Source of the DNA: Laetmonice hystrix
Lineage: Eukaryota
Length of the DNA: 64,000 nt
Reading direction: 5' to 3'
Assembly (NCBI GenBank): GCA_965235115.1
Contig: OZ249452.1
Coordinates: forward strand, 12,710,001-12,774,000
Shown here: piece by piece, positions 6,501 through 60,500 of the stretch
How the letters are laid out: every line of letters starts with the position of its first letter
Numbering within the stretch: the first letter of the stretch is position 1
Position numbers and translations under genes: made by a program
Notes under the pieces: model-generated
What the model saw: only the letters and a program-made list of their open reading frames with translations
The model's database searches: none
Told to the model about the DNA's origin: nothing

Positions 6501-9500
6501 GACATTTAACATGGTTGATGTCTTTAGCCTTTTATTTCTGGGCAGAAGAGCAACACGTTGAAGATAGCCCCAGACATTTTCAACCAAATCTATTCCCTAT
6601 GGAACGCCCTCAGAATCATAACTGAAACAACATCAAAGAGAATTCAATACCGTGCCGACACATTTCAATGTTTCATACCCTCAAGTGTTAATTTTGCACT
6701 CGTTGACTCTGGTCCGACCTTGGCCGTGTACTCAGCGACCTGTCTGGACGTTACGTCCTTCAGGGTCAACCGATGAACAGTGCCCTCCTTAGTGATCCGA
6801 CATTTTTCTGTGGACTTTAGAGGCTTTCCATCCTTAAACCATGTCACCTCAGCATCAGGTTTGTTCACCTCACACTCAAACACTGCCTCAGATTTCTCAG
6901 GAACACATTTGTCTGTCAGAGGCACAGTGAACTTAACTGGTGTCTCTGAAAACGAAATTACAATTTGGTTTAGGACTAGAACGCTAAAGCATTTGCGGGT
7001 TTGTCTTCAGGGAACTTGGTGGGAGGTTCTTTAAAATAGGATAGCGCTGGTGTTTAAACAGGGTTATAATGTAACACGTTCAGTGGGCAGTTGGTTTAGT
7101 GAAAAAGTGGAGGTTTGAAGTGGGGATCCAATTGTTTTAAATCGGTTAGGTGCTACTTACGGATACAATGTATCAGATATGGATATCTCTGGCTGGGAAT
7201 GCTGCAAGGTGACAACTAAATAAACATAACACATGTAAGTCTGGCATGTTAAGAATGACATTATGGGATGAATTGTGAACCTGAGCAGAACAAGGGAGAG
7301 TAAGTTCTGGGAAAGAATATTGGAAGATTCGGGGAATGATGCCATGGTGAACGAATTGATAAGAAACATCCATGAGGAATGAAACAGTAATGTAATGAGT
7401 TTGAAGGTTAGGGATGTAATTGCACTCCAACAGAAGGAATCTGTGTCTGCTGCAGAGCGTTTCCCTTTACACTGAGATGGGCACACAAGCCCAATTCAAC
7501 CAAAAAAACTTGTTTAAGTTTGGTTGGTTTTCTTCAGCCTTGCACAATCAGTGGAATTATATCAGAATATTCAAGAAACGTGTCCTGGCTCAATGTTCCT
7601 GGTCCAGAAGATAAAGCTAACTGACACACACTCCTTCTGTTTGAAGGCAGTAGATGATACAATGAATGAGATCCGGACGTGTTATAGAGACCATAACCTG
7701 GACAGATGTTAGTCAAACACCAAACACGGCGAATCCTGGTATTAGCATCTACAATCAAAGCTCACATCAATCCAATATATCTGAAATATAACAGAGATTT
7801 CCGTTTATAAAATAACGACTTTTCTTTAAGGTACTTACCTTTAACTGTCACTTTACATGATGTCTTGTTTCTCTCATCCAGTGCGGCCGTAAACTCGGTC
7901 ATATCGTCCATGGTAGCGTGTTTAATGATCAGTTTGTGAACTTTACCCTCCACGACGATCTCATACTTGTCGTCAGGTTTGATGACCTTGCCTTTCCTGG
8001 TCCATTTGACCTTGGCGTCAGGTTTGGATACCTCACATGTGAGCACCACTTCCTCGCCTTCATTGCAGGTGACATCCTTCAGTGGCGTGATGAATTTGAT
8101 AGCTACAGGGTTGGAGAAAGGGCGTTAGTTAGTACTATCTTAGCCGCTAGATGGCGTGTATTGGGCATATCAAGCGAGTCTTACATAGTCAGGTGTTGAA
8201 TCGTACATATATTTTCGTACACCCCTTGTATTAAAAATTCAAGTCATGATATCCATATATCTCTCCAAATAAAACTCTGAAAGGCAGTTCATATCCAATT
8301 AGGGCAAGTTTATGCTCTCTAATTTACGAGTCCCTTCCATGGAGTCTGTTCATAATCTGTGGATTATTTTGCCTATAGATGTCGCTATTATCGTTAGATG
8401 AACACGGTCCGTGGTATATGATGAATGGTGAGAATTCAGGAAAAGATTAACAAGAACTCAAGTTAACAAAACGGTCAGTTATATAACAAAGATCTCAAAC
8501 TACATTATCCACGTGTACCAGCAAACATTTATGACTACGGGGCTGACCATTTGAAATACAGGGGGGAGAGAAATCTATGGCTTCTCCTTATATACTACAA
8601 ACAAACTATAATATCTCTCATAATCAAGCAGGACCTTTTTTCCTCATGGATTTTAACTTCTTAACATATATCTTTAAAGCACATTTCTTCTGCACCTTCT
8701 AGTGATAACTTTAACCCCCCCCCCGTATCCAACGGTCCGCCCCCAAACACTATAGTTACCATGACGGCTGACGTTGACGGCGATGTATGCCTCAACACTC
8801 CTGTATCCAGCATGGCACGAATATTCGCCCTCGTCATCTTTTACTACGTCATGCACTATCAACACGTGCGAGGGAGCCTCCGACACAAACGTATACTTTC
8901 TACAATTCTCAGCGATAATTCCAATACCATCCAAACACCACTTCACGGGGCCGGTGGGCTTGGAGAGCTCAACGGCCAAGGCAAAGTCAGAGCCCTCGTC
9001 AACAGTTTTACCAACAAGAGGATGCGTGAAGAAAAGCTCTTCGTCCTCGTCAAGTCCGTCAGAATCGGAATGGTAAGGATCGTCCGTGTCATTATGGAAA
9101 CTCGCGAGTATGCGTTCAAGACTTGCGACTTTCATTCGTGGATTCAACCTACGCCCCTGGGGTTGCGAATCAAGGGTTGGTTCGGAGAGTGAATCCGATT
9201 CTGACCCGGATTCCAGAGAAATGGTTGTTCCCTCTGGGTCATGGTCTATTGATTGTGCTAACATTGTGTTGGAGGCTCGCAGGGGGTTCAGCAGCTCCAG
9301 GGTGGGTGAGGAGACAGGAGACGTGCTGGAGGATGGAGACGAGCTGCTGCAAGCTTTACCATGGAGGCAAGCATTAGAAATACATGCGACGTGGTCATCA
9401 AAACCAAAACAAAGCACGGAAAATCAAACAGGATCAGATCATCTTCATAAGGAATTATTTGTTTTAGTTTTAGAAATCAGAGAAAATTGTTATTGACATC

Positions 9501-12500
9501 GCTACCTTTTTAAAGATTCGGGGAATAACATGAGTCAGTAGATATATCGTGTGAAATGTTTTAAAATAAATGTTAGTAACTACTTCCTAACTATGTCTCA
9601 TTCCTGGATCACGTACCTTTCAAGACTTGACATATATTTGTAGTTCATGCATCAGTTATTCTTAAGAGCAATGACCACTAACTTAACCTGCATTCAGAAA
9701 GATCGGAATTTTAACTGTCAAAGCTTAACTTCATATTCCTTAACACTAGATCTGGCCTTTCAGCCTGTCTGTAATTTAAGCCGAGTCACTTAAAAGCAAA
9801 GCATAGGTTTACAATGCAAAGCTCCGTACCTGCAACACTTAACGTAATGGGACGCTGCGTCCCACATTCTCACAGGTTTAATATAGAATCAAGTGTAGCG
9901 TCATATACAGACCCTATCGATATCACTCGTAGTAATCTAATGGTAAATGTATGCAGTAATTAAGGCCTTAGTTATGAACGTTTATATATGCATAATGCAC
10001 GGTATCAAAGCGCTATGGATAAAGCAGGCTTGGTGTATACTGTGTGACAAGACTTCAGCTCCGTGTAAATTGTAATACTCTGTTTCTTGTTGATATTTTA
10101 ATCGAAATAAAAAGGCACTAGGTTGAATGACGCTCCCTTATAAAATTAAAGGACAGAAAAGGAAAGTTTTAGGTTGAAAAAGTAGAGGAGCAGGGCAGAT
10201 TGTGTGGAACAAGGTTTGCTATATCGATGGGAGAGGGATATTTGTGGCAAGTATCTGACCTTACACAGTGCACAACTCTATGTATAACTCTTGACATAGC
10301 ATTCATTTTTTATTATTTTATTGAAAAAAATGCAAACCAAAAACGTTGTTGGGTCCATCCGTAATGATATAACCGTCCTATATCTCTGATTTTCCACCAT
10401 TCTGGAACAGCTCTATTTATATGGGACTTTGCCACCCACGCAATCAGTCACCCGTGTTCTAACAGCCAATGCCTGCTCGTATTTAAAACTATTATATATA
10501 CGTCCTACCGGTAATCAGTTTGTAACGAGCTCAGTGATTGGCCCCCTGTACATGCGCAATACCATGCATATTGTTGTTTCTTAGTGCCTGGCCAATTATG
10601 CATTTCCTTAACTACCCATTCTCGTTCATACATACCAGAAGATTTTTATATCTTGCTTAGGCTTCTTTCTACCACTACCTGTTGTTCATTGGAAAATGGA
10701 ACAAGTAATTCAGTTTAACATTCAGAAAAAAATATCATGAAAGCAACTTGGTAATCATAATTAGTTATTCTACCTGTATTATTCTATATTTATGAGGCTA
10801 TTATTGTTATTATCTCACGATTATAAAATATTTATAAAACAACTCTTTACAGCCTTAATCCTATCTTTTGTACATCTGCAGTATATATCATTATGTATAA
10901 TTTCCTGGTTATCGTACACATTTGCCTATAAGCGGCCATAAGGCATAATCATGGCAAATTTTGAGCAGCGTTTCCTTCTTTTATAGCAAAGCAAAATAAA
11001 ATATTTTTAAAATGATAAAAAGAGGGGAAAGAAAGCTACCCAATGCATTCATAAATAAGAATGTCTTTGTTTCGTAGCGCCATCTTTATGATGTTAAAAT
11101 ATTATTCTATTAAAATAATGTTTTGATGATATTAGCTTTTATTTACCTTTTTTTCTAGGGCTCTTTGAAACCGAAGCCGGAGTTTGGAAACTCGCAGATG
11201 TTGAGGTGGTTTGGGACTTCCCTATAGTTGGACTCACAGAAGGTTTCCTTTTAGCTGATATGTACTGCATAGCACGTTGTTTGATGGCGTTTGCCTTCCC
11301 CGCCCTAGCATTGACGCGTGTGGGTGTTTGTGACCGGCTACCACCAGGTGGCGACAGTGTCTCCACTGATGTCGACTGGCCTTTGCTGAAGAACCCCATA
11401 CGGGCTGTAGTCGGTGAGAGTGATCTCGAACGCCGGTAGTCGGTCTTTGTGGTGGGACGCTGTGTACCACGTGACCCAGAATCCTCCCTCTGGGACCAAC
11501 CTGTGAGGTTACTAGTTGCACGCCTGAGTGACGTCTCTTCACTCCTTGAGGTGCCTCGGCTAGGCTCCTCCGGGTTCTCATCAATGCTAATATCATACAC
11601 TTTCCAATCAGAAACTGACAGCGTGCTGTCTGAGAGAGGTCTGGGTTTCCTAGCTGGTCCGAAGACGTTCACACTCAGCGGTTGACTTTCCGACCTTGAG
11701 AGCACAGGCCCTGCTGACTCTCCAGAGGTCATGTCCCTGAGGTCCAGGAGAGAGATAGCTCGATCTATAACGGATCTCAATGGAGGGAGTCTCTCCTGGG
11801 GCACAGCCTCTATGTCCTCCAGCTCATGCAACCGACTGATGTCCTGGAAACTCCTGGCTTTTGATTCTGTGTATCTGGACGATTCAGAGGACATTAACAG
11901 ATGTGAGTCGTGCTGTGATATTTTAGCCCAGTCAGATTGGGAAGCAGAGGCTTGTAAAGACAAGTCCCCTTCCATCCTTGTGTGATCTGTGAAGCCCTCC
12001 ATTTTAATTAACTCTTGTGGATTTTGTACCTCTATCCCCACTGGAGTGGTACTGGTAGACGAGCCCGTTAAGGAATCTGACTCTTTATGTGACATAACAT
12101 AATCTTCCGTCGTTACCTGATGCAGCAATGACGACTGCGCAGAGGGCGGTCTGTCATCTTGGGGCTTCGTCTGTGGTGACATGCCGCTATCTGCGCTTCT
12201 CAAACTCCTGTCAAACGTTGCATCGGCACGAACTGTACTGGACTCTTGAACCAAAGTGTACTCCATACGGCTAGGACTCTCCGCCTGCATTGTACCTTCA
12301 CAATGCCCTTTAAATGCCGAGTTTTCGACAATACTTTTGCTATCTACTCCTGTATCTACGCTGTGACCTGTATCATATCGCCCTTGTTCAACATGCTGAG
12401 CCCTATCAAAAACTTGTGTTTGCATTGTACCCTCATACCCTTTAAAAAGAATAATCTCAGAATTCAGAGTTGTTTCTGTAATGGACCTTTGTCCTGTAAC

Positions 12501-15500
12501 GTTACGGGCTTGGTGATTCATTGTGGCATCATTTCCTGAACCCTGTTCTAACACAGAAGCCCTGTTAACTAAGTCATATTTTGAGTCATATTTTGTGAAA
12601 CCAACACCTTCCTGCTTATTCAACTCAGTACACGCTATACCTCCTGCGCCTTTTGTATTCTCATCATCGGTTAGTGCTTTCTCTATATTTACAACAACCT
12701 TTCCACTTTCATGTGCACTATCTACCGGCGATACCTTTGTCCCAGTAACTTGGTCAAGAACAATTAGTGGTTGTTTTATCCCTGGTGATGTAAACTTCTT
12801 TGTGGTATCCTCACGAATATAACCCCATACCGTACCGCTTTGGTCTTGATTAAGGTTACTACTATCCTCTCCTGAAACTCCTTGAGTTACAGGCTGCAGT
12901 GCTTCAACATTCTGCCTTCCCTGATCATCTTTGATCTCATAACTTCCAACACCTTCTGTCCCTTCTTTGTGTAGAGGGTGAACCGATTTATGTTGTATTT
13001 CCTGTTCAAAGGTAGTTGTCGTGGTAACCAGAACAAGGTCATTGGTTGCGGGTATGGAAGGTGGTTCCACCCTCTGGTATTGTTCAACATCAGGACCTGG
13101 TACGTTGGTTTCCTTAACTAAACCGTCTTTTTCTTCTTCCTCATCATTTTCTCCCGACGTTACTATTTCTTGGCGATGGGAATTCATTGTGACATGACAG
13201 TCTGCTTCCTTAGACACCGGAGATAGACATGGTTTCTCTTCTAAAGTTTTGTTATGTGTCGGTTCCTCTCCTTGCTGCATGTCACCCTGACTCTCTGTTA
13301 TTTTAGTCGGTTCCACCGGTGGTGATCTCTCGGTACGACTGTTGTCCGATTCAGCTGTCGTTTCACCCTCTTCTTTGTATGCTTGTCTGGCCTTATCATC
13401 TGACTTGATGGGACTGGACTGCTCCGTGAGGATCCTTTGTGTTGATACTAAGACATACCCCTGTAAAACCTCTAAACAGCTCTCAGCGCCTTGTGGACCA
13501 CTGTCTCCTGGGACAAGACCCAAGTGTTGCTGGTTTGTGGTTGGTGAAGAAACCACAATGAAGTCATCCTCTTGGGTGGTCTCTTCACGCTGCACTGAAT
13601 GATCTGACTGATCTGTTTTCTGGATAGGTTGGGTTTCTGGGACTGCTGGAATCATTTCTCTGGTTACGAGTACGAAGTCATCGGTTTCAGTTCGCTCTGC
13701 AGGAGCGTGGATCGGCACTTCTGGGTGCCACTTGCAAGCAGGTTTGGCTGCTGTATCCTGAATGTCGCCTAAACTATAATATATAGGCCCAGGGTCTGCT
13801 GAATAGCTTTCACACTCCAGTCTTGTATCATCTTGGACGTCAAGCTGTACGTCTTCAGGAGTTACTGTCCCGCGGATTTTATCTGCGTGTAACTCATCCT
13901 GGATGTCTCTAGTGACTACAGATTCTTCAACCAAATTATATGGGCCTGTAGATTGCATACTGCCGCCTAAAACATGTAATGTGACTTGTTCCTCATTTGA
14001 TTCTTCAACCGAACTTTCCTCTCCACCAGGAGCTACAGATTCTACAACCAGCTGGCTTGCGTCTGTAGATGACACGCCTTCATCTGAAACTTGTAATGTG
14101 ACTCGTACCTCATTTGATTCTTCAACCGAAGTTTCCTCTTCACCAGGAGCTACAGATTCTTCAACCAGTTGACCTGCGTCTGTAGATGGCACGCCTTCAT
14201 CTGAAACCTGTAATGTGACTCGTTGCTCATTTGATTCTCCAACCGAAGTTTCCTCTCCACCAGGAGCTACTGATTCTTCAACCAGTTGATCTGCGTCTGT
14301 AGATGGCACGCTTTCACCTGAAACCTGTAATGTATCTTGTTCTTTGCCTGATTCCCTCACAGAGGGTTCCTCGCCATCAGGCTGCCTTACCCCATCTTTA
14401 GAGGCGACATGGGCTGAAATACGTTCTTTGACATGGGGATCAATGGCCTCAATGGCACTGTCACCCTTATCCACATCAAGATTGAAATCCGGGGTGCTCA
14501 GAACGGCTTCCTCTGCTGAAAGTGTTGGGGATGTTTCCTCCCAGCTTACTATGGGACTGCTTTCTTGCAAGTATGATGCATTCTGCTCAACCAGGTTATC
14601 CCCATCTACAGTATGTAAAGGTTCTGCCTTAGTTTGACTTGCTCCCTTTTGGATGTTCACTTCTGTAGCTTCCTCCAAAGGAGAAGCTATGTGAGCAGCG
14701 CTGGCTCTGGGCCATACTAGTCTTGTGCTTTCGGAAAACCCTTCTGAACTCAGCTTTTCGATTTTATCAGAGTTGTTGGAATACAGGCTTTCAGCTGGCG
14801 ATATATTTGCTTCAATGGCGTTAGTTGACTGAAGGTCATCTATTTGAGTTTCACTGCGAGTAACTGCAAAATAATATTCTTCATTGCTGACTGTCGGCAT
14901 TATGGCATGGTCCTCTTCATGGAAAGAATCATCCCACGGAGGGGATACTCGATGAAAGGTGCTTGGAATTCCTTGCTGAACTGAAATATGTACATCAGAA
15001 TATGTCTCTTTCTGTGGTGCTCCTTCAACTGGAACAATCGGAACAACGGGAACTGAGTTTCCTGGTTCTTTTTCAATCTCAACTTCCTTGGTTACTCTTA
15101 GATCCTCAATGCCCCTTTCGGGATCGACGGTTTGATCATTTATGAGCCTGTCAACATTGCCCTTGGCCTTGACCTTGACCCGTTTTCCCTCTACTATCTT
15201 CCAGTACCACTCCTCACTGGGGCTCTCTGCTTCCACAATCTCCCAGCATTCCTGCTCAGTAAAACCTCGTTCTGGGAATATGGCAACACGTTGTTCAGGG
15301 GACGCCTTGAAGATACAAACTGACCGAGGAACATTCAAATTCGAACTAACCTGTTTCAATGTAAGGTTCTCAAGGGTTTCCAGAGCATATTGCTGCGCGG
15401 GGGGCTTACCCATTGATAATTCCCCAATTTGAATTACGTTAATGAATTCATTTGACACCGTCCGAACGGATTCTCCTGTAAACATCTTCTTCTTACTTTC

Positions 15501-18500
15501 TTTACCTGAAAATAACCGCGCCCCTTCAACTCTGTCGCTCAATTTTTGACCCGATACAATCTCGTCAACCTTGTTCTCTGCTTCGATATGCGTTTCTATC
15601 ATGTCTGTATTGTCCGATTGAAGAATACCAAAAGTTTGGGACTGAACCGATTTGGCTGTTACCATTGATGAGGAACGTTTACCCAGATTTCGGTAGTGGG
15701 GACAGAGTTCAATAGATACGTGGTCATTTTCCTGCTTTACGTTATACAGCTCAAGATATTCAACGTAGCCTACCATCTCATCGCGATTTTCACAATAACA
15801 ATTTTCAAGAGGTTCGACCTGGAATTCACTCTCTCCCGAATCAATTATCCAAGAAGCGCGACTAACCTGAGGTTCCTGAACATGCTCTACTTCTACCTGA
15901 TCTGAAAAAGTTGTCTTTGAACGATTAATAACCTTGCCTGACAACAGATTCTGAATGTCATTAGCACCAATGTTAATAGGTTCTTTATCACTGTTGTGTA
16001 GGGACTGTGCTTCAGTCTGGAAGTGAGTGGTCACGTGACCCCTTGGTGAACTGGTGATGGGAGGTTCTTGGTGATTGTCCTTCTCCATGGAACTCCAATG
16101 GTCGACACGTTGAATTTGTAGATTGCCCGACATTTTATACATTTGTTTTCTTCCTGGTTCACGATGCCCATGCTTGGTACGCGTGGCTTCGCGGGACACT
16201 GAATCGTCTTTGATAAATTCTGCCTCGGATTCTAGGTTATCCATGAGTTTGTTGGAGAGGTAATGCATCGCCCGTTCTCCTTGACCATCATCTGACCGAT
16301 CAGGATGCTTTATATGCACGTTTAACTTGTCACTGATTTCTGAAATGGTCACTGAAGCCACACTCCTTTCTTGAGGTTCATTTGCATTTTTCTCCTGGGT
16401 CTCATCACACGAGACCAGGAAGGATTCAGAGAATTCTACACCATGACCCTGGATTTGTCGTCCGTGGCCATGAGGGGATTCCACTTGGTCACAACTGAAG
16501 GAACCATCATGGGTATCCGACTCAGATTTACTGCTGAGGTTCAGAGGTCCCTGGTTGCTTTCAAAGATTTCAGCATCTGATGACAGGTCAGCAAGGTTAT
16601 CTACAGCCCTTGGTTTCTTCACCTGACAAGGGGACCTTCCTCTTTCTGTGTCCTCATCACTTGCGGTTTCCTCAACCTTTTCAAGTGCACTGCTCTTTGA
16701 GGGACGCTGACTTTGCCCTTCACGCTCCTCATCAGTGACATCACTGTACTCACTGACCTCTTCAATGGTATACTGCCGATTCAGGACGACCTTGAGCATT
16801 TTCAGCTGAAGGTCAGTGCGGGGCGTTTCCTCATACGTTAGCAGTTGTGTGAGGTGGTCTGTCAGGTTGGCTGACCCCGGACTGGGTGTATCACTGGTTT
16901 CTAACTCCCAGGACAATGTACCTTCCTCCCAGGACAATGAACCTTCCCCAGAGGATGTAGATCCTTCAGAAGTAACTGGGCTTTCAGCGTCGTCCTGTGA
17001 CTGCGCCGTCCTTCCTTGTGTTTCGGTCTCTTCAACTGTGACGCTCTCACGTGACGTCTCCATGGAAACGTCACCACCAGGACGCGTGGCATCGACAGGC
17101 TTAATAGAGAAGTCACGTCTGTTTACGTACTCCACAGCTGGCCTATATAAGATTGGCTCCGGCGTTTCAGTTTCATTGGATGAGTATGACTGGTGAACAC
17201 GGTGAGAGGCAGGCAGGTTTCTGTCAGAAATACTTAGGGTTTTACCGTCCGCTTTGGGGACAATATTACTTAGAACATGACTTCTGAAAACTATTTCAGA
17301 ATCTGACGTTAATGTCTCTGCGAATTCCGGAGAGTCTAGCTCCTTTCCAGGGGATTCCTCTTCCACTGTGTTGAGGAAAGAAATGAAAAAATGGAAAACT
17401 CAGTATTTTGACACGATTACTGTTCGTGCAACCCAAACTCCCAGGTGAGAGCTATGCTCGGTGTTATAATAGAAATCAAATCGCAAGGACAAAAAGACCT
17501 CCACCTAACTAACTACTAACAGGAAATGATGGAAGAATAATAAACAGGATTCGTAAAGTCGATAGAAACTAAGGGTAAAGGTAGTGGTAACGCAGTGCTG
17601 GAAAACCGGAAACGGGGTCTTCAAGCAGGCTTTGTGACTTGTTTTGTCAGTTCTTTATTGAATTTTTGGTTTTATATTTGTGTGGTAGATACCTACCCAC
17701 CAATTTATTTTGAACGCTTTCAAATTATGATATTTAGATGATGTGTGAAAAAAATTATTAATGTTTTTATATCATTGGAGTCATTTCTTGTAACAGATAA
17801 ACGGGTACACATAATAATACCGTTTGGTTTTGTATTTCAACATATTCTAAAAACATTCTTTTAGAAATGATTTATTATTATATATTATGTAAAGCTAGGT
17901 CCAAATTGCACAGTCCCTTTGCAACCCAGTTCAGTTGTCGCTGGAATTTCGACGGTTATATTGCAGTTGTAAGGAGAAGCCTGAACTTATTTCCTGACAA
18001 TTAGAAGCGACGACCCAGCACCTTCCAAGTGTTAAAAAAGCTATGGTAAGCTCGCTGTTAGTGTAAACCATTATGTTGTTACATCCCAATCACCACTGTT
18101 TACAGTTATACTACGCTCCTAACCGCATCCCATACTCGTCCGCCCAGTTAATATAAGCCAACATCTTAAGACAAATGCATACTTTAGCATTACACGGATT
18201 TTGAAGTATAAGTCTTGTTTCATTAACATAATGGGTTCTTAATATTTTTTAATATGTTTTATCTACCATGATATTTTTGGTGTCCATAGAAGGCCACAAT
18301 TGTACTTATTTAAAGCAAGATTATCGTTAATTATTTGACTAATCCTGGAACTATTCAGATAAAATAAATACCAATATGCCTTTGATGGGATTCCTCACCT
18401 TCGACCTTGAGATAGGCCCCGGCCTCCTTGGCCCCTGCTCTGACAACATAATACCCCTCATCGATACCCGTGACGTCATAGACCCTCAAACACCTGGTGG

Positions 18501-21500
18501 CGCCACTGGTGGTGGTTTCAAATTTTTCACTGTCGTAAATCTGTATGCCGTCAATGTACCACGTGACCTGTGTGTCTGGTGGCGACACCTCACAGGTAAA
18601 GGCGGCAACTGAACGTTCCGATATCTCGGAGTCATTGGGAGTCCGAAGGAAAATGATGGGGTCATCTGGTAAAAACACAACCATGCAAACTCAACACAAC
18701 AAAATCTTATAAAACTACTTTTGGGGATCTTTTCTTTGGAAGTCTTGCAAAAGTACATGCTTGAAGTAATAATCAAACGCTAAACCAACGTGAACGTGCT
18801 AATGGTATTATACGGAAATCCAACCACAAAATTATATGTAAAGTAAATATGGGGAAAAACCAAAACTGAATTCAATGTAATTAACATGGTATCTAGTAGC
18901 ACACCATGCAGCAAACGACCTACCGCCTGTCTGAAACGCTCAATCGTAGTCCGTCTATAGGTCCTCCTGCTGAATGGTTGGACTAAAGTATGAAATGATT
19001 CTGATAAAGAAGGTTCCAGGAGTTCCAGGAGAGAGTTAACCTACCTTCCACCTTCAGTTTCCCTGTTGTCTTGACGTTCTTGGTCTTACAGGTGATGTCT
19101 CCGCTATCCTTCAGAAGTGTGTCCTTGATGATCAAAGTGTGTTTGCATCCGTCGTGGCTGAACTCGTACTTATCGCTCGGTTTGAGAGGAATGTTCTTCA
19201 TATACCACTTCACTTCAAACTCCTCATCGTTCAGTTCACACGTGAAGGTTGCTTCTGTGTGCTCAGGAGTTGTAACATCGTTCAGTTTGGCAGTGAACTC
19301 GGGCACCAAGGCTGAAAAAAAATCATGGATTGTCTTGAAATTCGAACATTGAGAGAGTGCTTCTTAATGATGAAAAATATGGGATAATATTGAAAAGTCA
19401 ACTTTAAAGAATTATCAAGACTTGTAACAGTAACGTTAAACATTACCAGGTTTGTCAATTAAGTCTCAAATTATAACCTAAAATGGATTTTTTTAAATGT
19501 GTTAGTATACGAGTTCTTTACCAAATACCTAGACCACGTGAACCCCCCCCCCCCTTACCCTTTAAGTACCAATTTCAGATCTCTTTAATGTAACTGTCTT
19601 TTCTCTATCTAATTACGGTTCCTTCACTACAGAGTAAAATAATAATGATAAAGACTTACGCTCCACAAAGAGCTTAGCTTTGCTCTCTGCCTTACGGAAG
19701 ACAGCCTTGACTTCGCCCTCATCGACTGGCCTTGCAATGTTAATACACAGTCTGTGAGTGAAGTCCTCAGCAAACACCTGGTATTTGGGACCTGGAACGA
19801 CCTTAGTGTCCTTGACAAACCAATCCAGGGGCATCTTCTTGTGGGTGACGTCACACTCAAAGATCCCGTTCTCTTTCTCTTTTATGTGTTGGTCCTCAAG
19901 TTCTCGGGTGAAACCGAACTGAAACAATCAGATTGAAAATGTTATCTTGACTTCGCACTTGCCCAGCTTGGCTAGCTGCTCAAGAAATGAGCATGCAGTG
20001 AGTTTGTCCTAACATATTTTACAAGCCCCCGTAGGTGAACCGCAATGCAGTGGCCAGCCCGGTTATTAGTCTATATAGATGAGTTTTAGTGACGACAACT
20101 TTGTCACACTACCCCCATGTCCTCATGAGAACCTCTAATGGCTGCTTTCAAATCAAATACTCACCTCAGCTTTTCCAAGAGGCAAGTCCTTTTCTTCAGG
20201 TTCTTCGACCTTCTTCTGTTTAGGCTGCCTCTGGTAAGCATCCTTGTCCTCCTCTGGCTCGACCTTCTCCTCCGCCGGTTCCTTCTTTGGTGATGGTCTC
20301 TTGGCCAAGTGGATGGAATCACGTTTCTTGCGTTCGTACCCCTCCCGCTCACGGTCCTCAGTGGGAACCTCTTCCTTGACTTCCTCTATTTGTTCTGGTG
20401 TTTTCTTCTCAACATGTCTGAGAGTATACTGAAGCTGTTCTGGGACATCCTCCTTGGTATCGTATTCAACCTTCCGAAGTTTCCCCCAGTCGACTTCCTC
20501 TACACCTTGATCTTTCACCTCATAGGTACTGAAATATGTTTTTTAATGATACATTTTATTATTTGATCATTGGACCACCTAAAATAAAATCACACCTAGG
20601 ACAAAATCACTCGAAAGTTCTCTGATCAGATCACTACCCTGTAGGATGAAATTACTCTAGAGTGTTCTGAACCTAGGATGAAATTACTCTAGAGTGTTCT
20701 GAACCTAGGATGAAATTACTCTAGAGTGTTCTGAACCTAGGATGAAATTACTCTAGAGTGTTCTGAACCTAGGACTAGAGCACTCTAAGAGTGTTCTGAA
20801 CCTAGGATGAAATTACTCTAGAGTGTTCTGAACGTAGGACTAGAGCACTCTAAGAGTGTTCTGAACCTAGGATGAAATCACTCTAGAGTGTTCTGATCCT
20901 AGGATGAAATCACTCTAGAGTGTTCTGATCCTAGGCGGATATCACTCTAGAGTGCTGATCCTAGGATGATATCACTCTAGAGTGAAAAATGAGGGTAGTT
21001 ATTTGATCCTGCTACACCTGTACTCACGTCTCTTTGAGTGCAGCCTTCCAGTCCTCAGCCTCCTCAGGTTTGTCGGTCACCATCAGTGTGGCGGGACAGG
21101 TGTCACTACCGAAGTCGTTCTCGATTGTAACCGTATACGTTCCAGCCTCCTTCTTGACAATTCCGTCGATCTCGAGGACGTGTTGCCCAGAAGGCTCGTC
21201 CAAGTACACCCTTGTTTTGGCGTCGTTTTTCATTTGTTTCCACTTGCCCTTAGACCACGTGACCTTCGGCGGGGGGTCTCCCTCGACCCGACAACGGAAG
21301 ATGAGCGTTTCTCCCTCCAGGATGGTACATTTGAGCGGTTTCTCGATGAAGGTCGGGGCGTGACCTTGGACGTTGAGATTGGCCTTGCATGAGTCTTCTC
21401 CACCTTGGTTTACGGCAACGACCTTGATTTCCCCGCCCATCTCTGAGAGGTCGTTGGTCAAGGTCATGTAGTACATCTTGGACCTGTCGTCGATCTCGAA

Positions 21501-27500: not shown

Positions 27501-30500
27501 AAGATATCTCTTGGTGCCGTGCCCCTTCCTTTGCTGCTTGTATCACATCTCGTAATAAACTTAACCCTGCAAGGAAGAAGGAAAGTCCAGATCATTTTTC
27601 CTGAAGTAGCACTGAAAAGATCACTTGACTTACCGGTAACGGTGATCGTTGCCTCGTGAACTGCCTCTCCAATGTTGTTCTTGGCGACGCACTTGTAAAC
27701 TCCGCCTTGTTTGGTGGTCACTTTGGGAATAGTCAAAGTGCTGACGTCACCCCTGGTAACGACCTTCAACTTCAGAGTCGGTGCCACTGCAGTGCCATCT
27801 CTGAAAAAAATGGCAATTTCATAATTAGGCATAGGTCATCAATTCTCAACTTTCTACTACTGTGCTTACAACAATCCTGATCGTGCTTATTTGATTTCAG
27901 CGTGATGAAACATGGAAGTCTACACTTACCTGTACCACGTGATCTGTGGGAGAGGTTTGCCCGTAAACTTGACCTTGAGCTGCAGCTGATCATTCTCCAC
28001 GAGAGTCTGGTGGGAAACCAACATCCGGTTACTTTCATATACAACCTCGGCTTGTCTAGCAGACATTGAGAATGTAGTCTCTTCACTGGGCCAAACACAA
28101 ACTTGTCTCTTTTCATCCTGAATTTATCAATGTACTACCTTACTAAGCTAAACATTTCAAAAATATCATTTAAGGCTGGAAATTTCACACTCACGTCCTC
28201 CTTGTAGACAGTGATGAATTCCGGATGTCCCTTCTTTTTGGGTTTCTCTGGGACTTTCTCTGGCGTCTCAGGGGACGGAGCCTTTGGTTTCTCCTCTGGT
28301 TTCCCCGCTTTGGGCTCTTCAACCTTCTGCGGGACCTCAGGTTCTGGTGCCTTTTCCGGTGTCTTTTCCTTTGGTTTACCTGGTTCTGGGGCAAGTTTGG
28401 TAAAAGAAGAATTAGTACATGAACTTGGATTCCCCTTTTGAAGTTGGGAAATTTATATTTAAATTGTTGCAAGGGATTCAAGTCGAATCCTGGCATTGAT
28501 CACATACCTTGAACAGTAACTCTAGCTTCATAGACGGCTTCTCCAACTTGGTTCTTAGCAACACATTTGTAGACGCCGCCTTGCTTCAAGGTAACCTTGG
28601 GGATGGTCAGCACACTGCTGTCCTGAGTTGTCACAATCTTGACCTTCAAACCTGGATGGACCTGGACCTCATCCCTGAGCCACTTGATCTGAGTCGGAGC
28701 TTTGCCGGTGAACTTGACCTTCAGCTCAAGTGGAGAATTCTCCAAGAGCTCCTAAAGAGGTTGTAAATTAATTATTTTAATTACTTTTTAAATTAAATTA
28801 TGAAAGATTACGAGAAAAGCTATGAGAAGAAACACGCTGAGTATGGTTCCTTTTATAAACACCACATCCTGCTAAAGATAGTACTGGTATCAATTTATAT
28901 GGATTAGTAATGAATCATGGCTGCAGAAAAAAATACACATACCACTTCTTCGTAAACCTCAGTAAATTCTGGGGTTCCTTTCTTCTTGGGCTTCTCCTCA
29001 GGTTTGGGCGCCTCAGGGGAAGGCTCTTTGAGCTTCTCTGGAGAAGGTTCCTTGGGCTTCTCCTCTGGTTTTCCAGGCTCTGGTTTAATTTCTTCTAGTG
29101 CCTTCTCTGGTGATTTCTCCTTTGGCTTCTCAGGTTCTGTGGAGTGGAAACATATTCACAAACGTTAATTAATCTTTCTGATACTGTGAGATTTAATGGT
29201 CAGTGTAATCTAATGCCTCCTCTGCCTTCAAAGGGTTTGAACTGTTGGCATTTTTGTCATTTGTCCAACTGCAATACTTGCAGATATATTTTTAAGACTC
29301 TTGAATGATTTTGTTTGCAAAGTATGATCATTCGCCACCCAGTTCTCCTTTTGACGTCACAATAGCATTTTTTGTGGCCTAGAATAAGAGTAGGCCTATA
29401 TCGAATTTACCTTTAACAATAACCAATGCTTCGTGTACAGCCTCTCCAACTTGGTTCTTGGCAACACATTTGTAGACGCCGCCTTGCTTCAAGGTAACCT
29501 TGGGGATGGTCAGTACACTGCTGTCCTGAGTTGTCACAATCTTGACCTTCAAACCTGGATGGACCTGGACCTCATCCCTGAGCCACTTGATCTGAGTCGG
29601 AGCTTTGCCGGTGAACTTGACCTTCAGCTCAAGTGGAGAATTCTCCAAGAGCTCCTAAAGAGGTTGTAAATTAATTATTTTAATTATTTGTCCAATTAAA
29701 TTACGGAAGAATACTAGAAACGCTACTAGAAGAAACACGCTGAGTATGATTACTTTTATAAACACCACATCCTGCTAAAGATAGTACTGGTATCAATTCA
29801 TATGGGTTAGTAATGAATCATGGCTGCAGGAGAAAATACACATACCACTTCTTCGTAAACCTCAGTAAATTCTGGGGTTCCCTTCTTCTTGGGCTTCTCC
29901 TCAGGTTTGGGTGCCTCAGGGGAAGGCTCTTTGAGCTTCTCTGGTGAAGGTTCCTTTGGCTTCTCCGGTGAAGGTTCCTTGGGCTTCTCTGCCGGTTCTT
30001 CAGGTACTGGTTTAACTTCCTCAGGTACTTTCTCTGGAGACTTTTCCTTTGGTTTCTCTGGTTCTGTGAGAAATGTGACACGTGCATATTTTAACTCTAA
30101 TTAATGTAATTCCTAAGTTGATTTGATATACTTTGTTTGACTTTTAAAATTGATTCACTACTGCAACTAATTTACTACCTCAACCATAACCGCCAAGGTA
30201 AATAAAGGTTTTCCTCAAACTTATTGTATTTATTCCTGGACATGATTACTCAAATTAAAGATGCCATAGCTTCATATCAGAAGAGAGCATTCAGAACATA
30301 CCTTGAACAGTAACCACTGCCTCATGTACAGCCTCTCCAACCTGGTTCTTGGCAACACATTTGTAGACGCCTCCTTGCTTCAAGGTAACCTTGGGGATAG
30401 TCAGCACACTGCTGTCCTGAGTTGTCACAATCTTTACCTTCAAACCTGGATGGACCTGGACCTCATCCCTGAGCCACTTGATCTGAGTTGGAGCCTTTCC

Positions 30501-57500: not shown

Positions 57501-60500
57501 CTCCTGTATATAAGACATATTTTAATAATTGATATTTTGCACAGGTATTAAAATATTCGTCATACATCTTACACAAAGGTATCTCCTGGCGTTTTTCAAT
57601 TTCAAATTTCAGAATTTCGCTATCAATTCATAATCTTAAATAGTAGGACTGCAGAAAACTACTCCTAAAATCTTAACAACGGTTTAATTACAGCATAAAT
57701 ATCTGTGGTTTGAATTGGATTATGAAATATTCTGGGTATAGGGTATGTGACTGGTTAAGTACTGGCATACACAGAGTAAGTCAAGTGTCTATAAATGTAC
57801 CACATCAAAATTAATAATTCTGGTCAATTAGTCAAATAAAAGCCAGTAAAACCATGCAAATGCAGAGCCAATTTGGGAGGTACCTTCAGACTACCAGACA
57901 AGTCATGGTTCACTCACCCTCCAGGACAATAAGTTCAGCTGAACACATTGCCGTTCCTGACAAGTTTTTCGCAACACACGTATACCTTCCTGTGTCCTCT
58001 GGGAAAACTTCTTTAATAATCAGTGAGCATTGGTTGTCGTCATCGTAAAACTGGAGAAAGTCTGGGGATGGCTCGAGCAAAATACTGTCCCGGAACCAGG
58101 CAACATTAGGTTTAGGGTTCCCAGAGATGGAGCATTCAAAACGGGCCAGGTCGCCATCATGCATGTACAGACTCCTCAAGGGTTGCAGGAATTGAGGACC
58201 TTCAGGATGTCCAACGACGTCTTCCTCTATGAAATGATGGCAATTCCAATGCATTTTTTAAATACAAAAGTTATGTTAGTTTCACACAACTCATGCACAT
58301 GCTAAGGTTTTGAGATCTCCCCCAGGAAACGTATATACTTTATAAAGTAACTCACAAATAGTATGTCACCCTGTGACATACGTGTTCTATAATGATCAGC
58401 TCAGAATTTTTGTCACATAAATATAAATGTTAAAATCATGACAATTCCCTACACCTCAAGAAAACGTCCCCTTACTTGTTTCTGCAGGGATGTCTTCAAT
58501 AGCTCGAGTAAGCTGCCTCTCCACCAGTCTGTTGTACTCTTCCTTCTCCTTTAGAAAACTTCCAGGCACCCATCCCTCTTTATTATTGAAAGCTTTCTTT
58601 ACAAGCCACCAATCATCCTGGGAGTCATCTAACACCTCCACTTTCTCTCCTTCATGGAGCGACATGACCTCGTCTGACTCGGGATCATAGGAACTTATCG
58701 CTATGAAACAAAGTCGATCATCCACATTGAAGTCGGAGCCAGCTGCGCTTAGATTGCTCCGGGAGTGTGAAGACCCTTTGTCCATGTCATGGAGTGAGTT
58801 AACAGAAGGTGCTGACACTGATATATTATCTGGTTCATCGACCTGAGGTTCTGCCACAGCGTGTGTGATAATGCTCTCCGTACGATCCAATGTCTTACGG
58901 CTCTCTGTCAGATCAGTGTTGGTGGAGACTTGGGTATGTTGTTCCAGGGATACGTCTCCGCGGTGACTGAGCTCCATCTTGATGGTTTTCACCTCTGTCA
59001 CTTTTGTCTGGAGTGTCACCTCCTCGATGACTTGTGCCTCTTCTGTTTTGTAAATCTTATCGCTCTCAAACTGGATTCCTGCAAGGTGTCCCGGAGAGGT
59101 GGACTCAGTGAAGACCATGTCGGGACGGAGTGTCACCTCAAACGTTGGGTCCATGTAGTTGCCCGGAATGGCGACGACCTGTTGCTCTGCCTGTATGCTG
59201 TACTCTTCCTCACTGTCGTCGGCAAACGACGTTGTCATCTCAGGCATTTCTCGTTCTTCTTCCCTAACAACCATCTGCTTCACCTGCTCAGCCTTGAACT
59301 GGTCACTTTTGATGGTGGGATGGGGAATAACTGTGACACTTGTTGTCTCGAAGACGAAAGGGTCTGATTTACTTATCTTAATCTCTTGGTATCTTTCCTT
59401 GATGAAGGACGGCCTTCCGTCAGCTCCCACCTCCTCATGGATCTCCCGGTAGTGCCTGGAGTTCTCCCTTCTTGGAATCAGCTGAGACATCATCGTGCTA
59501 TCTTCACGGATGTTTTCTGACTCTATGACCTGTACATTGCCTTCCTGTATGGTTTCTCGTGTAATGTTGGCACTACCATTTTGAATGACACTTGTTTCGG
59601 ACTCGGCGACGTCTGTTCCTGTCTGACTGTGGGCCAAATGAAGGCTCTTGTCTTCCTCCTCTTCCTCTGATTCCGTTGATTCGGAGTCTTCAGACTCACT
59701 TCTCCAAACAATGGGGACCTTTTTAACAACCTCTTCCCTCCCCTGTAACGTTTCTGTTGTTTTTCTTGACTCCTGTTTGACTGTCACCTCCATAGTATCT
59801 GCCGTGGAGGAGATGATTTCAATTTCACCCTCTTCCACACCTTCGTCCTCTTCTTCTTCTTCTGGAAGTTTAAGCTGGGGAACTTGGATCTTTCTTTCAA
59901 TCATTGGAACATCCTCTTCCAATACGTCTTCTTTTTCTTCCTCTTCGGAATCTGTTGCCTCATCACTATCAGATTCTAATTCCATCTCGTTTGCTCTCTG
60001 AGTAACTACTGTGGTTTCTGTAGCCTTCATTATGTCTGAGCCTTCCACGAGAACAGAGGTAGTGCTATGCTGTGTAATTTCTGAAGACATTGACTCGAAC
60101 TCCTCACTCTCCTCGTTTGGAAGATTAAGTTTCGGAATCTCTATCTTCCTTTCAACCCTTTCCAATTCTTCCTCCAGGATTTCATCTTCAGATTCTGAGT
60201 CCTCGTCACTCCCCAGTTCATCCTCAATCCCCACCGAACTTTGGATAGATACCTCCATCCCTTTACCTTTCTCTACGTTTTCTCCTGGAAGGCATGCAGG
60301 AAAGTCACACATAACCAAAAATAAAACCATGCTTAATTAATCAAGAGTAATAATAAGGAAAGCATTCAAAGATACATTAAAACCAAAGGTGTTTTAATTC
60401 TTCAAACATCTCCTTGGGAATCAGATTTTACTAGCCTAGGAGTAGTTTCATTTAAAGTTTTTTCGACGTTTTTCTAAAGACGTCTAAAATAAATATTTCT

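What the first reader, a model, noticed from the sequence alone, without database searches (positions are those of the whole stretch)
11138..17365. 6.2-kb exon whose donor, stop codon and poly(A) signal overlap: internal cassette or Novex-like terminal exon
Seen in sequence: the 2073-codon exon ends AAA G|GT AAA TAA AAG. GTAAAT is a donor hexamer also used at 29411 and 30718. Splicing there keeps phase 1 into the downstream Ig exons. Reading through adds GK-stop, and the stop lies within AATAAA (plus strand 11138-11143). Two more AATAAA sit at 10309 and 10317 in the exon-free 1.8 kb below. The exon is symmetric and so also skippable. Established: vertebrate titin makes a truncated Novex-3 isoform from a multi-kb alternative terminal exon. 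Inference: one site could give three outcomes (skip, include, terminate).
Basis: partly seen in the sequence, partly recalled or inferred. Interest (0 to 1): 0.7.

Follow-up and report, generated by a model that had tools for sequence, protein, structure and literature searches.

The report
Truncating end module of titin-like gene
A 6.2-kb exon in the middle of a giant titin-like muscle gene of a marine invertebrate is real and appears to end a shortened version of the protein, much like vertebrate Novex-3 or fly kettin, but it does so by splicing to a small, previously unnoticed last exon rather than through the overlapping poly(A) signal.

Summary
The sequence facts hold. A 6,219-nt, phase 1-1 open exon lies on the minus strand at 17365-11147. 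It ends AAAG|GTAAATAAA, so the donor, a GK-stop read-through and an AATAAA overlap.

One public run of the same sample (X4) covers only exons and carries exon-exon joints, so it behaves as RNA. It shows three things:
- The GTAAAT donor is used, but it joins an unnoticed acceptor at 10678, not 9353. This mini-exon adds GSGRKKPKQDIKIFWYV-stop. It runs on unspliced at least to 10429, towards twin AATAAA at 10322-10309.
- A second contig keeps the 468-nt last intron. It gives GK-stop and reads through the overlapping AATAAA.
- A 1.3-kb contig joins 19045 to 8102. It skips the big exon, the mini-exon and two neighbouring exons.

No 11147->9353 joint was seen. The exon is therefore most likely the body of an alternative 3'-terminal module, analogous to Novex-3 or kettin, rather than an internal cassette.

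It encodes a 228-kDa acidic, domain-free region with a basic tail. Its first third and last 260 residues are conserved in the one relative available. It shows no similarity to vertebrate Novex-3. The 5' junction and the exact poly(A) site remain inferred. I rate it a new member of a known kind, of moderate interest.

The parts
19045..19311 (-). I-set Ig exon A (267 nt, phase 1-1). Its donor (GT at 19044-19043) is the one seen joined to 8102 in the skipping transcript.
   Evidence: Pfam I-set, E 2.3e-14. Sequence read. The loose end of X4 contig 25 matches 19047-19076 exactly.
18399..18665 (-). I-set Ig exon B (267 nt, phase 1-1), directly upstream of the big exon. It is skipped in the 19045->8102 transcript and is a possible first exon of the alternative module.
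   Evidence: Pfam I-set, E 6.2e-11. Splice sites read. The skip is shown. Its link to the big exon is inferred only.
11147..17365 (-). Big exon of 6219 nt (2073 codons), phase 1-1. It encodes a 228-kDa acidic (pI 4.7) S/E/T-rich region without a Pfam domain, ending in a basic S/T-rich tail of about 260 aa.
   Evidence: ORF and translation. No Pfam family. Composition. Residues 18-736 and the last 258 aa are conserved in the relative's ORFs P0002 and P0001. X4 RNA-like contigs lie at 11144-11247 and 12253-12800. Of the 15 allelic differences listed, 10 are synonymous.
13916..14381 (-). Internal tandem repeat of 117 nt (39 aa), about 3.1-3.6 copies, inside the big exon.
   Evidence: Tandem Repeats Finder, 86-92% matches. 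The repeat is visible in the translation.
11141..11146 (-). Donor GTAAAT of the big exon, used in RNA.
   Evidence: X4 joint 10675->11144, 'CT..AC, cut +3'. On the minus strand this is GT at 11146-11145 and AG at 10680-10679.
11139..11147 (-). Read-through codons GGT AAA TAA (G-K-stop), used when the last intron is retained.
   Evidence: Sequence. X4 contig 28 runs unbroken from 10651 to 11173. The relative's ORF also ends ...SPRKKQGK-stop.
11138..11143 (-). AATAAA overlapping the stop. It is present, but use as a poly(A) signal is not shown.
   Evidence: Sequence. The RNA-like contig 28 reads through it to 10651.
10679..11146 (-). Last intron of 468 nt, 27.6% GC. It is removed in one RNA contig path and retained in another.
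   Evidence: The joint contig and contig 28 in X4. Composition.
10300..10678 (-). Hidden 3'-terminal mini-exon. Its coding part 10678-10626 adds GSGRKKPKQDIKIFWYV and a TGA at 10628-10626, followed by a 3' UTR. RNA is seen down to 10429. The end near 10300 is inferred.
   Evidence: X4 joint and contig 27 (10429-10680), which is unbroken across the possible donor at 10636. Translation. No X4 contig lies in 9303-10304.
10309..10322 (-). Twin AATAAA (10322-10317 and 10314-10309), with a U-rich stretch upstream and a GU-rich TGTGCACTGTGT about 45 nt downstream. This is the probable poly(A) signal of the truncated isoform.
   Evidence: Sequence. Use is inferred from where the X4 coverage stops.
8760..9353 (-). 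Next downstream exon (594 nt, phase 1-1), with a disordered part followed by an I-set Ig. It is skipped in the transcript seen. Only one 150-nt X4 contig lies on it.
   Evidence: Pfam I-set, E 1.4e-5. Sequence. X4 contig 26 at 9109-9258. A syntenic 241-aa I-set ORF exists in the relative.
7839..8102 (-). Ig exon (264 nt, phase 1-1) that receives the 19045 donor in the long, skipping isoform.
   Evidence: X4 contig 25 is laid on 7839-8104 with its upstream part matching 19047-19076. Pfam I-set, E 1.9e-9.

Best explanation
The 6.2-kb exon is the body of an alternative 3'-terminal module in a giant titin/sallimus-like muscle gene of a lophotrochozoan-type invertebrate.

When the module is chosen, an upstream phase-1 Ig exon splices to the acceptor at 17365. 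This step is inferred. The exon adds 2073 residues of unique, acidic, apparently disordered sequence with a conserved basic, Ser/Thr-rich tail.

Its weak GTAAAT donor then has two fates:
- It splices across a 468-nt intron to a small last exon at 10678. This exon adds 17 residues, a TGA and a 3' UTR. The splice is shown.
- It is not spliced, and the message then reads G-K-stop. This form is also shown.

Both forms probably end at the twin AATAAA near 10315. This is inferred.

When the module is not chosen, the donor at 19045 splices straight to 8102 and the protein continues into the distal Ig arrays. This is shown.

The gene therefore makes a truncated isoform with two alternative C-termini beside the full-length one. 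The decision is a splice-site choice at the upstream donor, coupled to use of an internal poly(A) site.
For: - Run X4 behaves as RNA. Its contigs lie only on exons and carry exon-exon joints, whereas X1-X3 of the same sample also cover the introns.
- The X4 joint is GT(11146-11145)..AG(10680-10679). Contig 27 (10429-10680) continues past the stop without a break. Contig 28 (10651-11173) keeps the intron. Contig ends at 11144 and 10680 are exactly where the two paths stop sharing letters.
- X4 contig 25 (1328 nt) joins 19045 to 8102. Its loose end matches 19047-19076 exactly.
- The spliced frame gives ...SPRKKGSGRKKPKQDIKIFWYV-stop.
- Twin AATAAA with U-rich and GU-rich flanks lie at 10322-10309. 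No X4 contig lies between 10304 and 9259.
- The exon is coding and under constraint:
  - It is open for 2073 codons.
  - Residues 18-736 are 40-44% identical and the last 258 residues 54% identical to ORFs in the same gene position in the one relative.
  - Ten of 15 listed allelic differences are synonymous, and the only coding indel is 12 nt.
- There is no ATG before residue 102 although conservation starts at residue 18, so the exon must be entered by splicing.
- The exon sits mid-gene. Ig exons on the same strand run from about 12.43 to 12.89 Mb of contig C29, on both sides of it.
Against: - All RNA evidence comes from Logan contigs of one run whose type is not on record. Contigs cannot show transcript ends, and their depths are poor measures (tool warning).
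- The joint contig has only 25 letters on its shorter side.
- X4 coverage is shown only to 10429, because an allelic 29-nt indel breaks the contig. The poly(A) site is therefore inferred.
- X4 also has a hole inside the exon (11307-12141), so holes elsewhere prove little.
- The junction into 17365 was not seen.
- Conservation of the mini-exon could not be tested, because no DNA is held for the relative.
Confidence: 0.75

Rival explanations
1. Internal cassette. The big exon is spliced 11147->9353 (or 8102) and simply inserts 2073 residues into the full-length protein. The 10678 exon would be a minor or nonsense-decay by-product.
For: - The exon is symmetric (phase 1-1), and 9353 and 8102 accept phase 1 in frame.
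- The contig upstream of the donor has more depth (284) than the two paths seen leaving it together (146 + 77). This leaves room for a third path.
- Only one sample was seen.
Against: - No 11147->9353 or 11147->8102 joint was listed, although both sides lay in the stretch laid.
- The 9353 exon carries a single 150-nt contig, and its acceptor is weak (..ggtaaag|C).
- The 10678 exon contig continues 200 nt beyond its stop without a branch.
- The last 260 residues form a conserved basic tail that ends exactly at the donor in both species, as expected of a C-terminus.
Confidence: 0.12
2. Composite terminal exon. The donor is read through, translation stops at TAA 11141-11139, and the overlapping AATAAA (11143-11138) directs cleavage near 11120, leaving an almost absent 3' UTR.
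For: - The three signals overlap.
- A read-through RNA form exists (contig 28).
- The relative's ORF also ends G-K-stop.
Against: - The read-through contig continues unbroken for about 490 nt past the AATAAA to 10651 and merges with the mini-exon contig.
- The sequence downstream of 11138 is A/T-rich, with no GU-rich element.
- Given the donor hexamer, the AATAAA has a chance probability of about 0.03, and G-K-stop follows any phase-1 GTAA(A/G)T donor about one time in five.
- Contigs would hide a minor poly(A) end, so occasional use is not excluded.
Confidence: 0.08
3. The joints are not evidence of transcripts. X4 would be DNA or a mixed library, and the 468-nt skip and the 19045->8102 join would be assembly artefacts or a processed pseudogene elsewhere.
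For: - The run type is not on record.
- The joint contig is short (side 25).
- The tool warns about short sides.
Against: - Both joints fall exactly on canonical GT..AG sites that keep phase 1.
- One of them uses the donor predicted beforehand.
- X4 lacks the introns that X1-X3 cover.
- The tail is single-copy in the genome, so there is no processed copy.
Confidence: 0.05

Closest known systems
Novex-3 isoform of vertebrate titin (TTN exon 48)
   Same: - Both are multi-kb alternative exons of over 2000 codons in the proximal part of a giant Ig-rich muscle gene.
- Inclusion brings a stop codon and a poly(A) signal and gives a truncated isoform.
- Full-length isoforms skip the exon (PMC13649281; here).
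   Different: - Exon 48 holds six Ig domains between its insertion sequences and carries its own stop (PMC13649281).
- Here no Ig or other Pfam domain is found.
- No sequence similarity to anything outside one close relative is found.
- The stop lies in a separate 3' mini-exon or in the retained last intron.
- The resemblance is one of layout, not shown homology.
Kettin, the short isoform of Drosophila sallimus (sls)
   Same: - It is an invertebrate titin-like gene that makes a short N-terminal isoform through an early alternative stop, beside long isoforms (PMC9886281, PMC11081514).
- The gene here likewise has long Ig-rich open frames upstream of the window and an SH3 exon and PEVK-like Ig arrays upstream of the exon.
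   Different: - From my own knowledge, kettin ends soon after its Ig-linker region, without a 2000-residue unique extension.
- Orthology of this gene to sls was not tested here.
Alternative last exons with terminal-intron retention (general class of coupled splicing and polyadenylation)
   Same: - The choice between an internal terminal module and downstream exons is made by a splice-site choice.
- The last intron is spliced in one form and kept in the other, giving two C-termini on one poly(A) site.
   Different: Nothing unusual for the class, except the size of the penultimate exon and the fact that its donor, the read-through stop and an AATAAA overlap.

Membership tests
Novex-3-type truncating terminal exon of a titin-like gene | Lies inside a giant Ig-rich muscle gene, with Ig exons on both sides | tested here: met
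   I-set exons lie at 18399-19311 upstream and 7839-9353 downstream. The Ig exon cluster spans C29 from 12.43 to 12.89 Mb around the window.
Novex-3-type truncating terminal exon of a titin-like gene | Multi-kb exon encoding isoform-specific sequence | tested here: met
   6219 nt, 2073 codons, single copy in the genome.
Novex-3-type truncating terminal exon of a titin-like gene | Inclusion ends the reading frame and the transcript (own stop and poly(A) signal) | tested here: inconclusive
   A stop is reached in both RNA forms, at TGA 10628-10626 or TAA 11141-11139. However, the stop lies outside the exon proper, and the poly(A) end near 10300 is inferred, not seen.
Novex-3-type truncating terminal exon of a titin-like gene | Skipped in full-length isoforms | tested here: met
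   X4 contig 25 joins 19045 to 8102.
Novex-3-type truncating terminal exon of a titin-like gene | Sequence or domain homology to TTN exon 48 (six Ig domains with insertion sequences) | tested here: not met
   No Pfam family at E <= 0.01. An exhaustive search of 1.84 billion representatives with the last 1200 aa found one unnamed relative only. There were no PDB or Atlas matches. No direct alignment to the TTN exon 48 sequence was made.
Novex-3-type truncating terminal exon of a titin-like gene | C-terminal region binds obscurin or other partners at the Z/I-band | not testable with these tools
   No partner is known. The tail has conserved short motifs only.
Cassette (internal, skippable) exon | Seen spliced on both sides to flanking coding exons | tested here: not met
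   The donor was seen joined only to the terminal mini-exon at 10678, and no joint to 9353 or 8102 was listed. The 5' junction was not observed. Absence in contigs of one run is weak evidence.
Composite terminal exon (donor read-through with intronic polyadenylation) | Transcripts read through the donor | tested here: met
   X4 contig 28 spans 11173-10651 unspliced.
Composite terminal exon (donor read-through with intronic polyadenylation) | Cleavage at a poly(A) signal inside the intron (here AATAAA 11143-11138) | tested here: inconclusive
   The contig reads through the signal to the next exon. Contigs cannot show ends, so minor use is not excluded.

The most novel reading that the evidence does not exclude
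The mini-exon at 10678 may be a shared, phase-1 'terminator' that any upstream Ig exon can splice to. Exon ends 19045, 18399 and 11147 all finish ..AAG in phase 1. The gene could then make a graded series of truncated proteins, all ending GSGRKKPKQDIKIFWYV, with or without the 228-kDa unique region. The hint is that the mini-exon contig has far more k-mer depth (618) than the two paths seen entering it (146 + 77). This could equally be 3' bias. A second novel reading is that a Novex-3-like truncated titin with a unique extension of about 2000 residues is ancestral to bilaterians rather than a vertebrate invention.
Probability: 0.15. Interest if true: 0.6.

Novelty: new member of a known kind. 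Interest (0 to 1): 0.4.

Why it matters
Truncated titin isoforms (Novex-3, kettin) anchor at the Z-disc without reaching the thick filament, and they tune stiffness and signalling. This finding would show that an annelid- or mollusc-type animal builds the same kind of short isoform. It does so with an unrelated 228-kDa acidic extension and a conserved basic tail. That points to repeated evolution, or great age, of this way of dividing titin's work.

It also gives a concrete gene model for annotation: a hidden terminal exon, two C-termini and a skip junction. Automatic gene models built from open reading frames would likely miss the 53-nt coding part of the mini-exon. They might wrongly thread the 6.2-kb exon into the full-length protein.

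Tried and rejected
- Function of the unique region. Pfam found nothing, PDB sequences nothing, and the ESM Atlas gave no score of 0.9 or more for the tail or the conserved N-part. AlphaFold2 on a two-sequence alignment of residues 500-745 gave pLDDT 28, which is uninformative and says nothing about fold.
- Relatives. The exhaustive search and two word-based searches found ORFs of one ENA assembly only. Its DNA is not held, so conservation of the mini-exon, donor and AATAAA could not be tested.
- The 5' junction. A search with the first 120 residues for transcript-derived fragments was blank.
- Paralogue in the same genome. None was found.
- Stand-alone nested gene with its own promoter. I rejected this because conservation begins at residue 18 and the first ATG is at about residue 102.
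- Possible donor CTG|GTATGT at 10636 inside the mini-exon. I rejected it as a major site because contig 27 is unbroken across it, and it would leave phase 2.
- Depths from contigs were used only as hints, following the tool's warning.
Full report
**Observation**

The minus strand carries an open frame of 2075 codons at 17366-11139. Reading the ends directly gives the following:
- The acceptor is ...ctcaacacag|T, with AG at 17367-17366.
- The 3' end is AAA AAA G|GT AAA TAA AAG.
- The exon is therefore 17365-11147, 6219 nt or 2073 codons, in phase 1 at both ends.
- GTAAAT lies at 11146-11141, TAA at 11141-11139 and AATAAA at 11143-11138.
- Two more AATAAA lie at 10322-10317 and 10314-10309.
- G|GTAAAT also follows open frames at 29411 and 30718.

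An open frame of this length cannot be chance (about e^-99.5). The triple overlap is weaker evidence. Given a phase-1 GTAAAT donor in these AT-rich introns, a stop at the third codon has a probability of about 0.22 and AATAAA about 0.03.

**Setting**

- The flanking minus-strand ORFs are I-set Ig domains.
- An SH3 exon lies at 58456-60330.
- 24-nt tandem repeats recur about every kilobase between 38 and 42 kb.
- The window is G000:C29:12710001-12774000.
- I-set matches on the same strand run from about 12.43 to 12.89 Mb.
- The exon therefore sits in the middle of a giant titin/sallimus-like gene, with about 160 kb of N-terminal exons upstream of it.
- Earlier notes of the scan call the animal annelid- or mollusc-like. 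I did not test this.

**RNA evidence**

Four runs of one sample hold the stretch. Laid on 7800-12800, X1-X3 cover introns and exons alike, so they are DNA.

X4 has 59 million letters of contigs and behaves differently. Its contigs lie at 7839-8104, 9109-9258, 10429-11247 and 12253-12800. It has nothing in 8134-8968 or 9303-10304, and it carries exon-exon joints. I therefore treat it as RNA, although its type is not on record. It shows three things.

1. **The donor is used, but it joins a hidden acceptor.**
   - One contig skips 468 letters. Its ends are CT..AC after a shift of 3, which on the minus strand is GT at 11146-11145 and AG at 10680-10679.
   - The predicted donor is thus used, but it joins an acceptor that nobody had noted (...ttccaatgaacaacag|GTAGTGG), not 9353.
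   - In phase 1 the new exon reads GSGRKKPKQDIKIFWYV, then TGA at 10628-10626.
   - Contig 27 (10429-10680) continues 200 nt beyond that stop without a branch. This includes the possible donor at 10636.
   - It ends where an allelic 29-nt indel, seen in X1-X3, breaks the graph.

2. **A second form keeps the intron.** Contig 28 (10651-11173) keeps the 468-nt intron. This form reads G-K-stop and passes straight through the overlapping AATAAA.

3. **The whole module can be skipped.**
   - Contig 25 (1328 nt) lies on 7839-8104. It continues upstream with letters that match 19047-19076 exactly.
   - This is a 19045->8102 junction, in phase 1 on both sides.
   - It skips Ig exon B (18665-18399), the big exon, the mini-exon and the exon 9353-8760.

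The contig boundaries are what a de Bruijn graph would give for a spliced/unspliced bubble. Contig 29 ends at 11144 and contig 27 starts at 10680, exactly where the two paths stop sharing letters. Neighbouring contigs overlap by 30 letters. This explains the joint's short 'side' of 25 and argues against an artefact.

No 11147->9353 joint was listed, although both sides were within the stretch laid. The tool warns that contig depths are poor measures and that holes prove nothing. X4 does have a hole inside the exon itself (11307-12141). I therefore use depths only as hints:
- 146 for the spliced path against 77 for the retained path.
- 618 on the mini-exon.
- 48 on the long-isoform contig.
- 7 on the 9353 exon.

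**Is the exon coding, and how is it entered?**

An exhaustive search of 1.84 billion representatives with the last 1200 residues found one protein, P0001. It is 54% identical over the last 258 residues and ends ...SPRKKQGK.

P0001 comes from a 529-kb contig of an ENA assembly, and the layout there is the same:
- very large ORFs;
- a gap of 2.2 kb;
- a 241-residue I-set ORF;
- then Ig exons.

A second ORF there, P0002, matches residues 18-736 of the exon at 40-44%. The middle of the exon is not recognisably conserved. It contains a 39-residue repeat in about 3.5 copies.

Conserved tail blocks are:
- LPPLRSVIDRAISLLDLRD
- NVFGPAxKPRPLSDS
- DYRRSRSLSP..MGFFxKGQSxSVETL
- RAGKANAIKQRAMQYISA
- SKSPRKK

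Within the species, 10 of 15 listed allelic differences in the tail are synonymous. Ten lie at third codon positions (P = 0.0085). The only coding indel is 12 nt, whereas non-coding indels are 1, 1, 2, 8 and 29 nt.

Conservation starts at residue 18 and the first ATG is near residue 102. The exon must therefore be entered by splicing from upstream coding exons. This rules out a nested stand-alone gene. Which donor feeds it (18399 or 19045) was not seen. A last search for transcript-derived fragments was blank.

**What the exon encodes**

- A 228-kDa, acidic (pI 4.7) polypeptide rich in Ser, Glu and Thr. Its last 261 residues are basic (pI 10.3) and 27% Ser/Thr.
- No Pfam family, no solved relative and no Atlas look-alike.
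- A structure prediction of the best-conserved part had pLDDT 28, which tells nothing.
- The tail is single-copy in the genome.

**Mechanism proposed**

The gene chooses, at the donor of an upstream Ig exon, between two acceptors:
- the strong acceptor of the big exon (a long pyrimidine run before 17365);
- the acceptor at 8102.

The first choice commits the transcript to an internal end. The weak GTAAAT donor (A at +5) is either spliced to the mini-exon or left unspliced. Both forms meet a stop and run towards the twin AATAAA at 10322-10309. These have a U-rich stretch upstream and a GU-rich element about 45 nt downstream.

Shown:
- use of the donor;
- the mini-exon;
- the retained form;
- the skip.

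Inferred:
- the 5' junction;
- the poly(A) site;
- the proportions of the forms.

**Comparison with known systems**

[quoted passage not shown] It adds over 2000 residues, with six Ig domains between insertion sequences (PMC13649281).
- Drosophila sls makes a short isoform, kettin, through an early alternative stop (PMC9886281, PMC11081514).
- The present case has the same layout and the same likely consequence, an N-terminal titin fragment that cannot reach the distal part.
- Its unique region has no Ig domain and no detectable similarity to anything but one close relative.
- Its stop lies in a separate mini-exon or in the retained intron.
- It therefore works like Novex-3 or kettin. It is not shown to be homologous to either.

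**Verdict**

  - Skip and termination are real.
  - The internal-cassette outcome has no support.
  - Use of the overlapping poly(A) signal has no support.
  - The '1.8 kb below' holds the true terminal exon.
- It is a new member of a known kind, of moderate interest.
- The scan had also listed this same stretch in another reading (s1-353763). It had noted another possible truncating exon 21 kb downstream (s1-330581), which I did not test beyond seeing the ORF.

Noticed in passing
window 13916-14381 (-): A 117-nt (39-residue) unit is repeated about 3.1-3.6 times at 86-92% identity inside the big exon (EESVAPGGEETSVEESNE.RVTLQVSDEGVPSTDA.QLV). This looks like a recent in-frame expansion of the disordered region.
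   Followed up: partly
window 11523, 10400, 10801: Allelic indels appear in the DNA runs of the same sample: 12 nt (in frame) in the coding tail, 29 nt in the putative 3' UTR and an 8-nt insertion in the last intron. The 29-nt indel is where the RNA contig of the mini-exon breaks off.
   Followed up: partly
window 9440 (X2 loose end) and 9355 (end of X3 contig 21): A DNA contig of run X2 leaves the reference at 9440 with letters found nowhere in the window. This may be a structural variant or a haplotype-specific insertion in the intron just upstream of the 9353 exon.
   Followed up: no
window 7839 (-): The 1328-nt RNA-like contig stops exactly at the donor of exon 8102-7839. This suggests a branch, meaning alternative splicing or a variant, directly downstream.
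   Followed up: no
relative's ORFs P0002:1107-1138 and P0001:549-580: In the related species the 32-residue tail motif SRAGKANxIKQRAMQYISAQKKPSPKVDRT occurs twice at 94% identity, once inside the upstream ORF and once in the tail. This is a recent internal duplication of the best-conserved motif. The motif is a basic amphipathic stretch that might bind calmodulin or a similar partner, which is my own guess.
   Followed up: partly
G000:C29:20.96-21.17 Mb (-): A second giant Ig-rich locus lies on the same chromosome. Many I-set matches fall in one 4153-residue open frame, which may be a twitchin/projectin-like gene.
   Followed up: no
L003:1353-1724 (-) = G000:C29:12688352-12688723: This is the Ig exon noted earlier by the scan (s1-330581). 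Its frame runs on to a stop (...CEVTVDSAYSHQYAIYNNTPYAL-stop) 21 kb downstream of the window start. It could be a second truncation point of the same gene.
   Followed up: no
window 20642-20984: A 32-nt unit is repeated about 10.7 times (89% matches) between Ig ORFs upstream of the finding.
   Followed up: no
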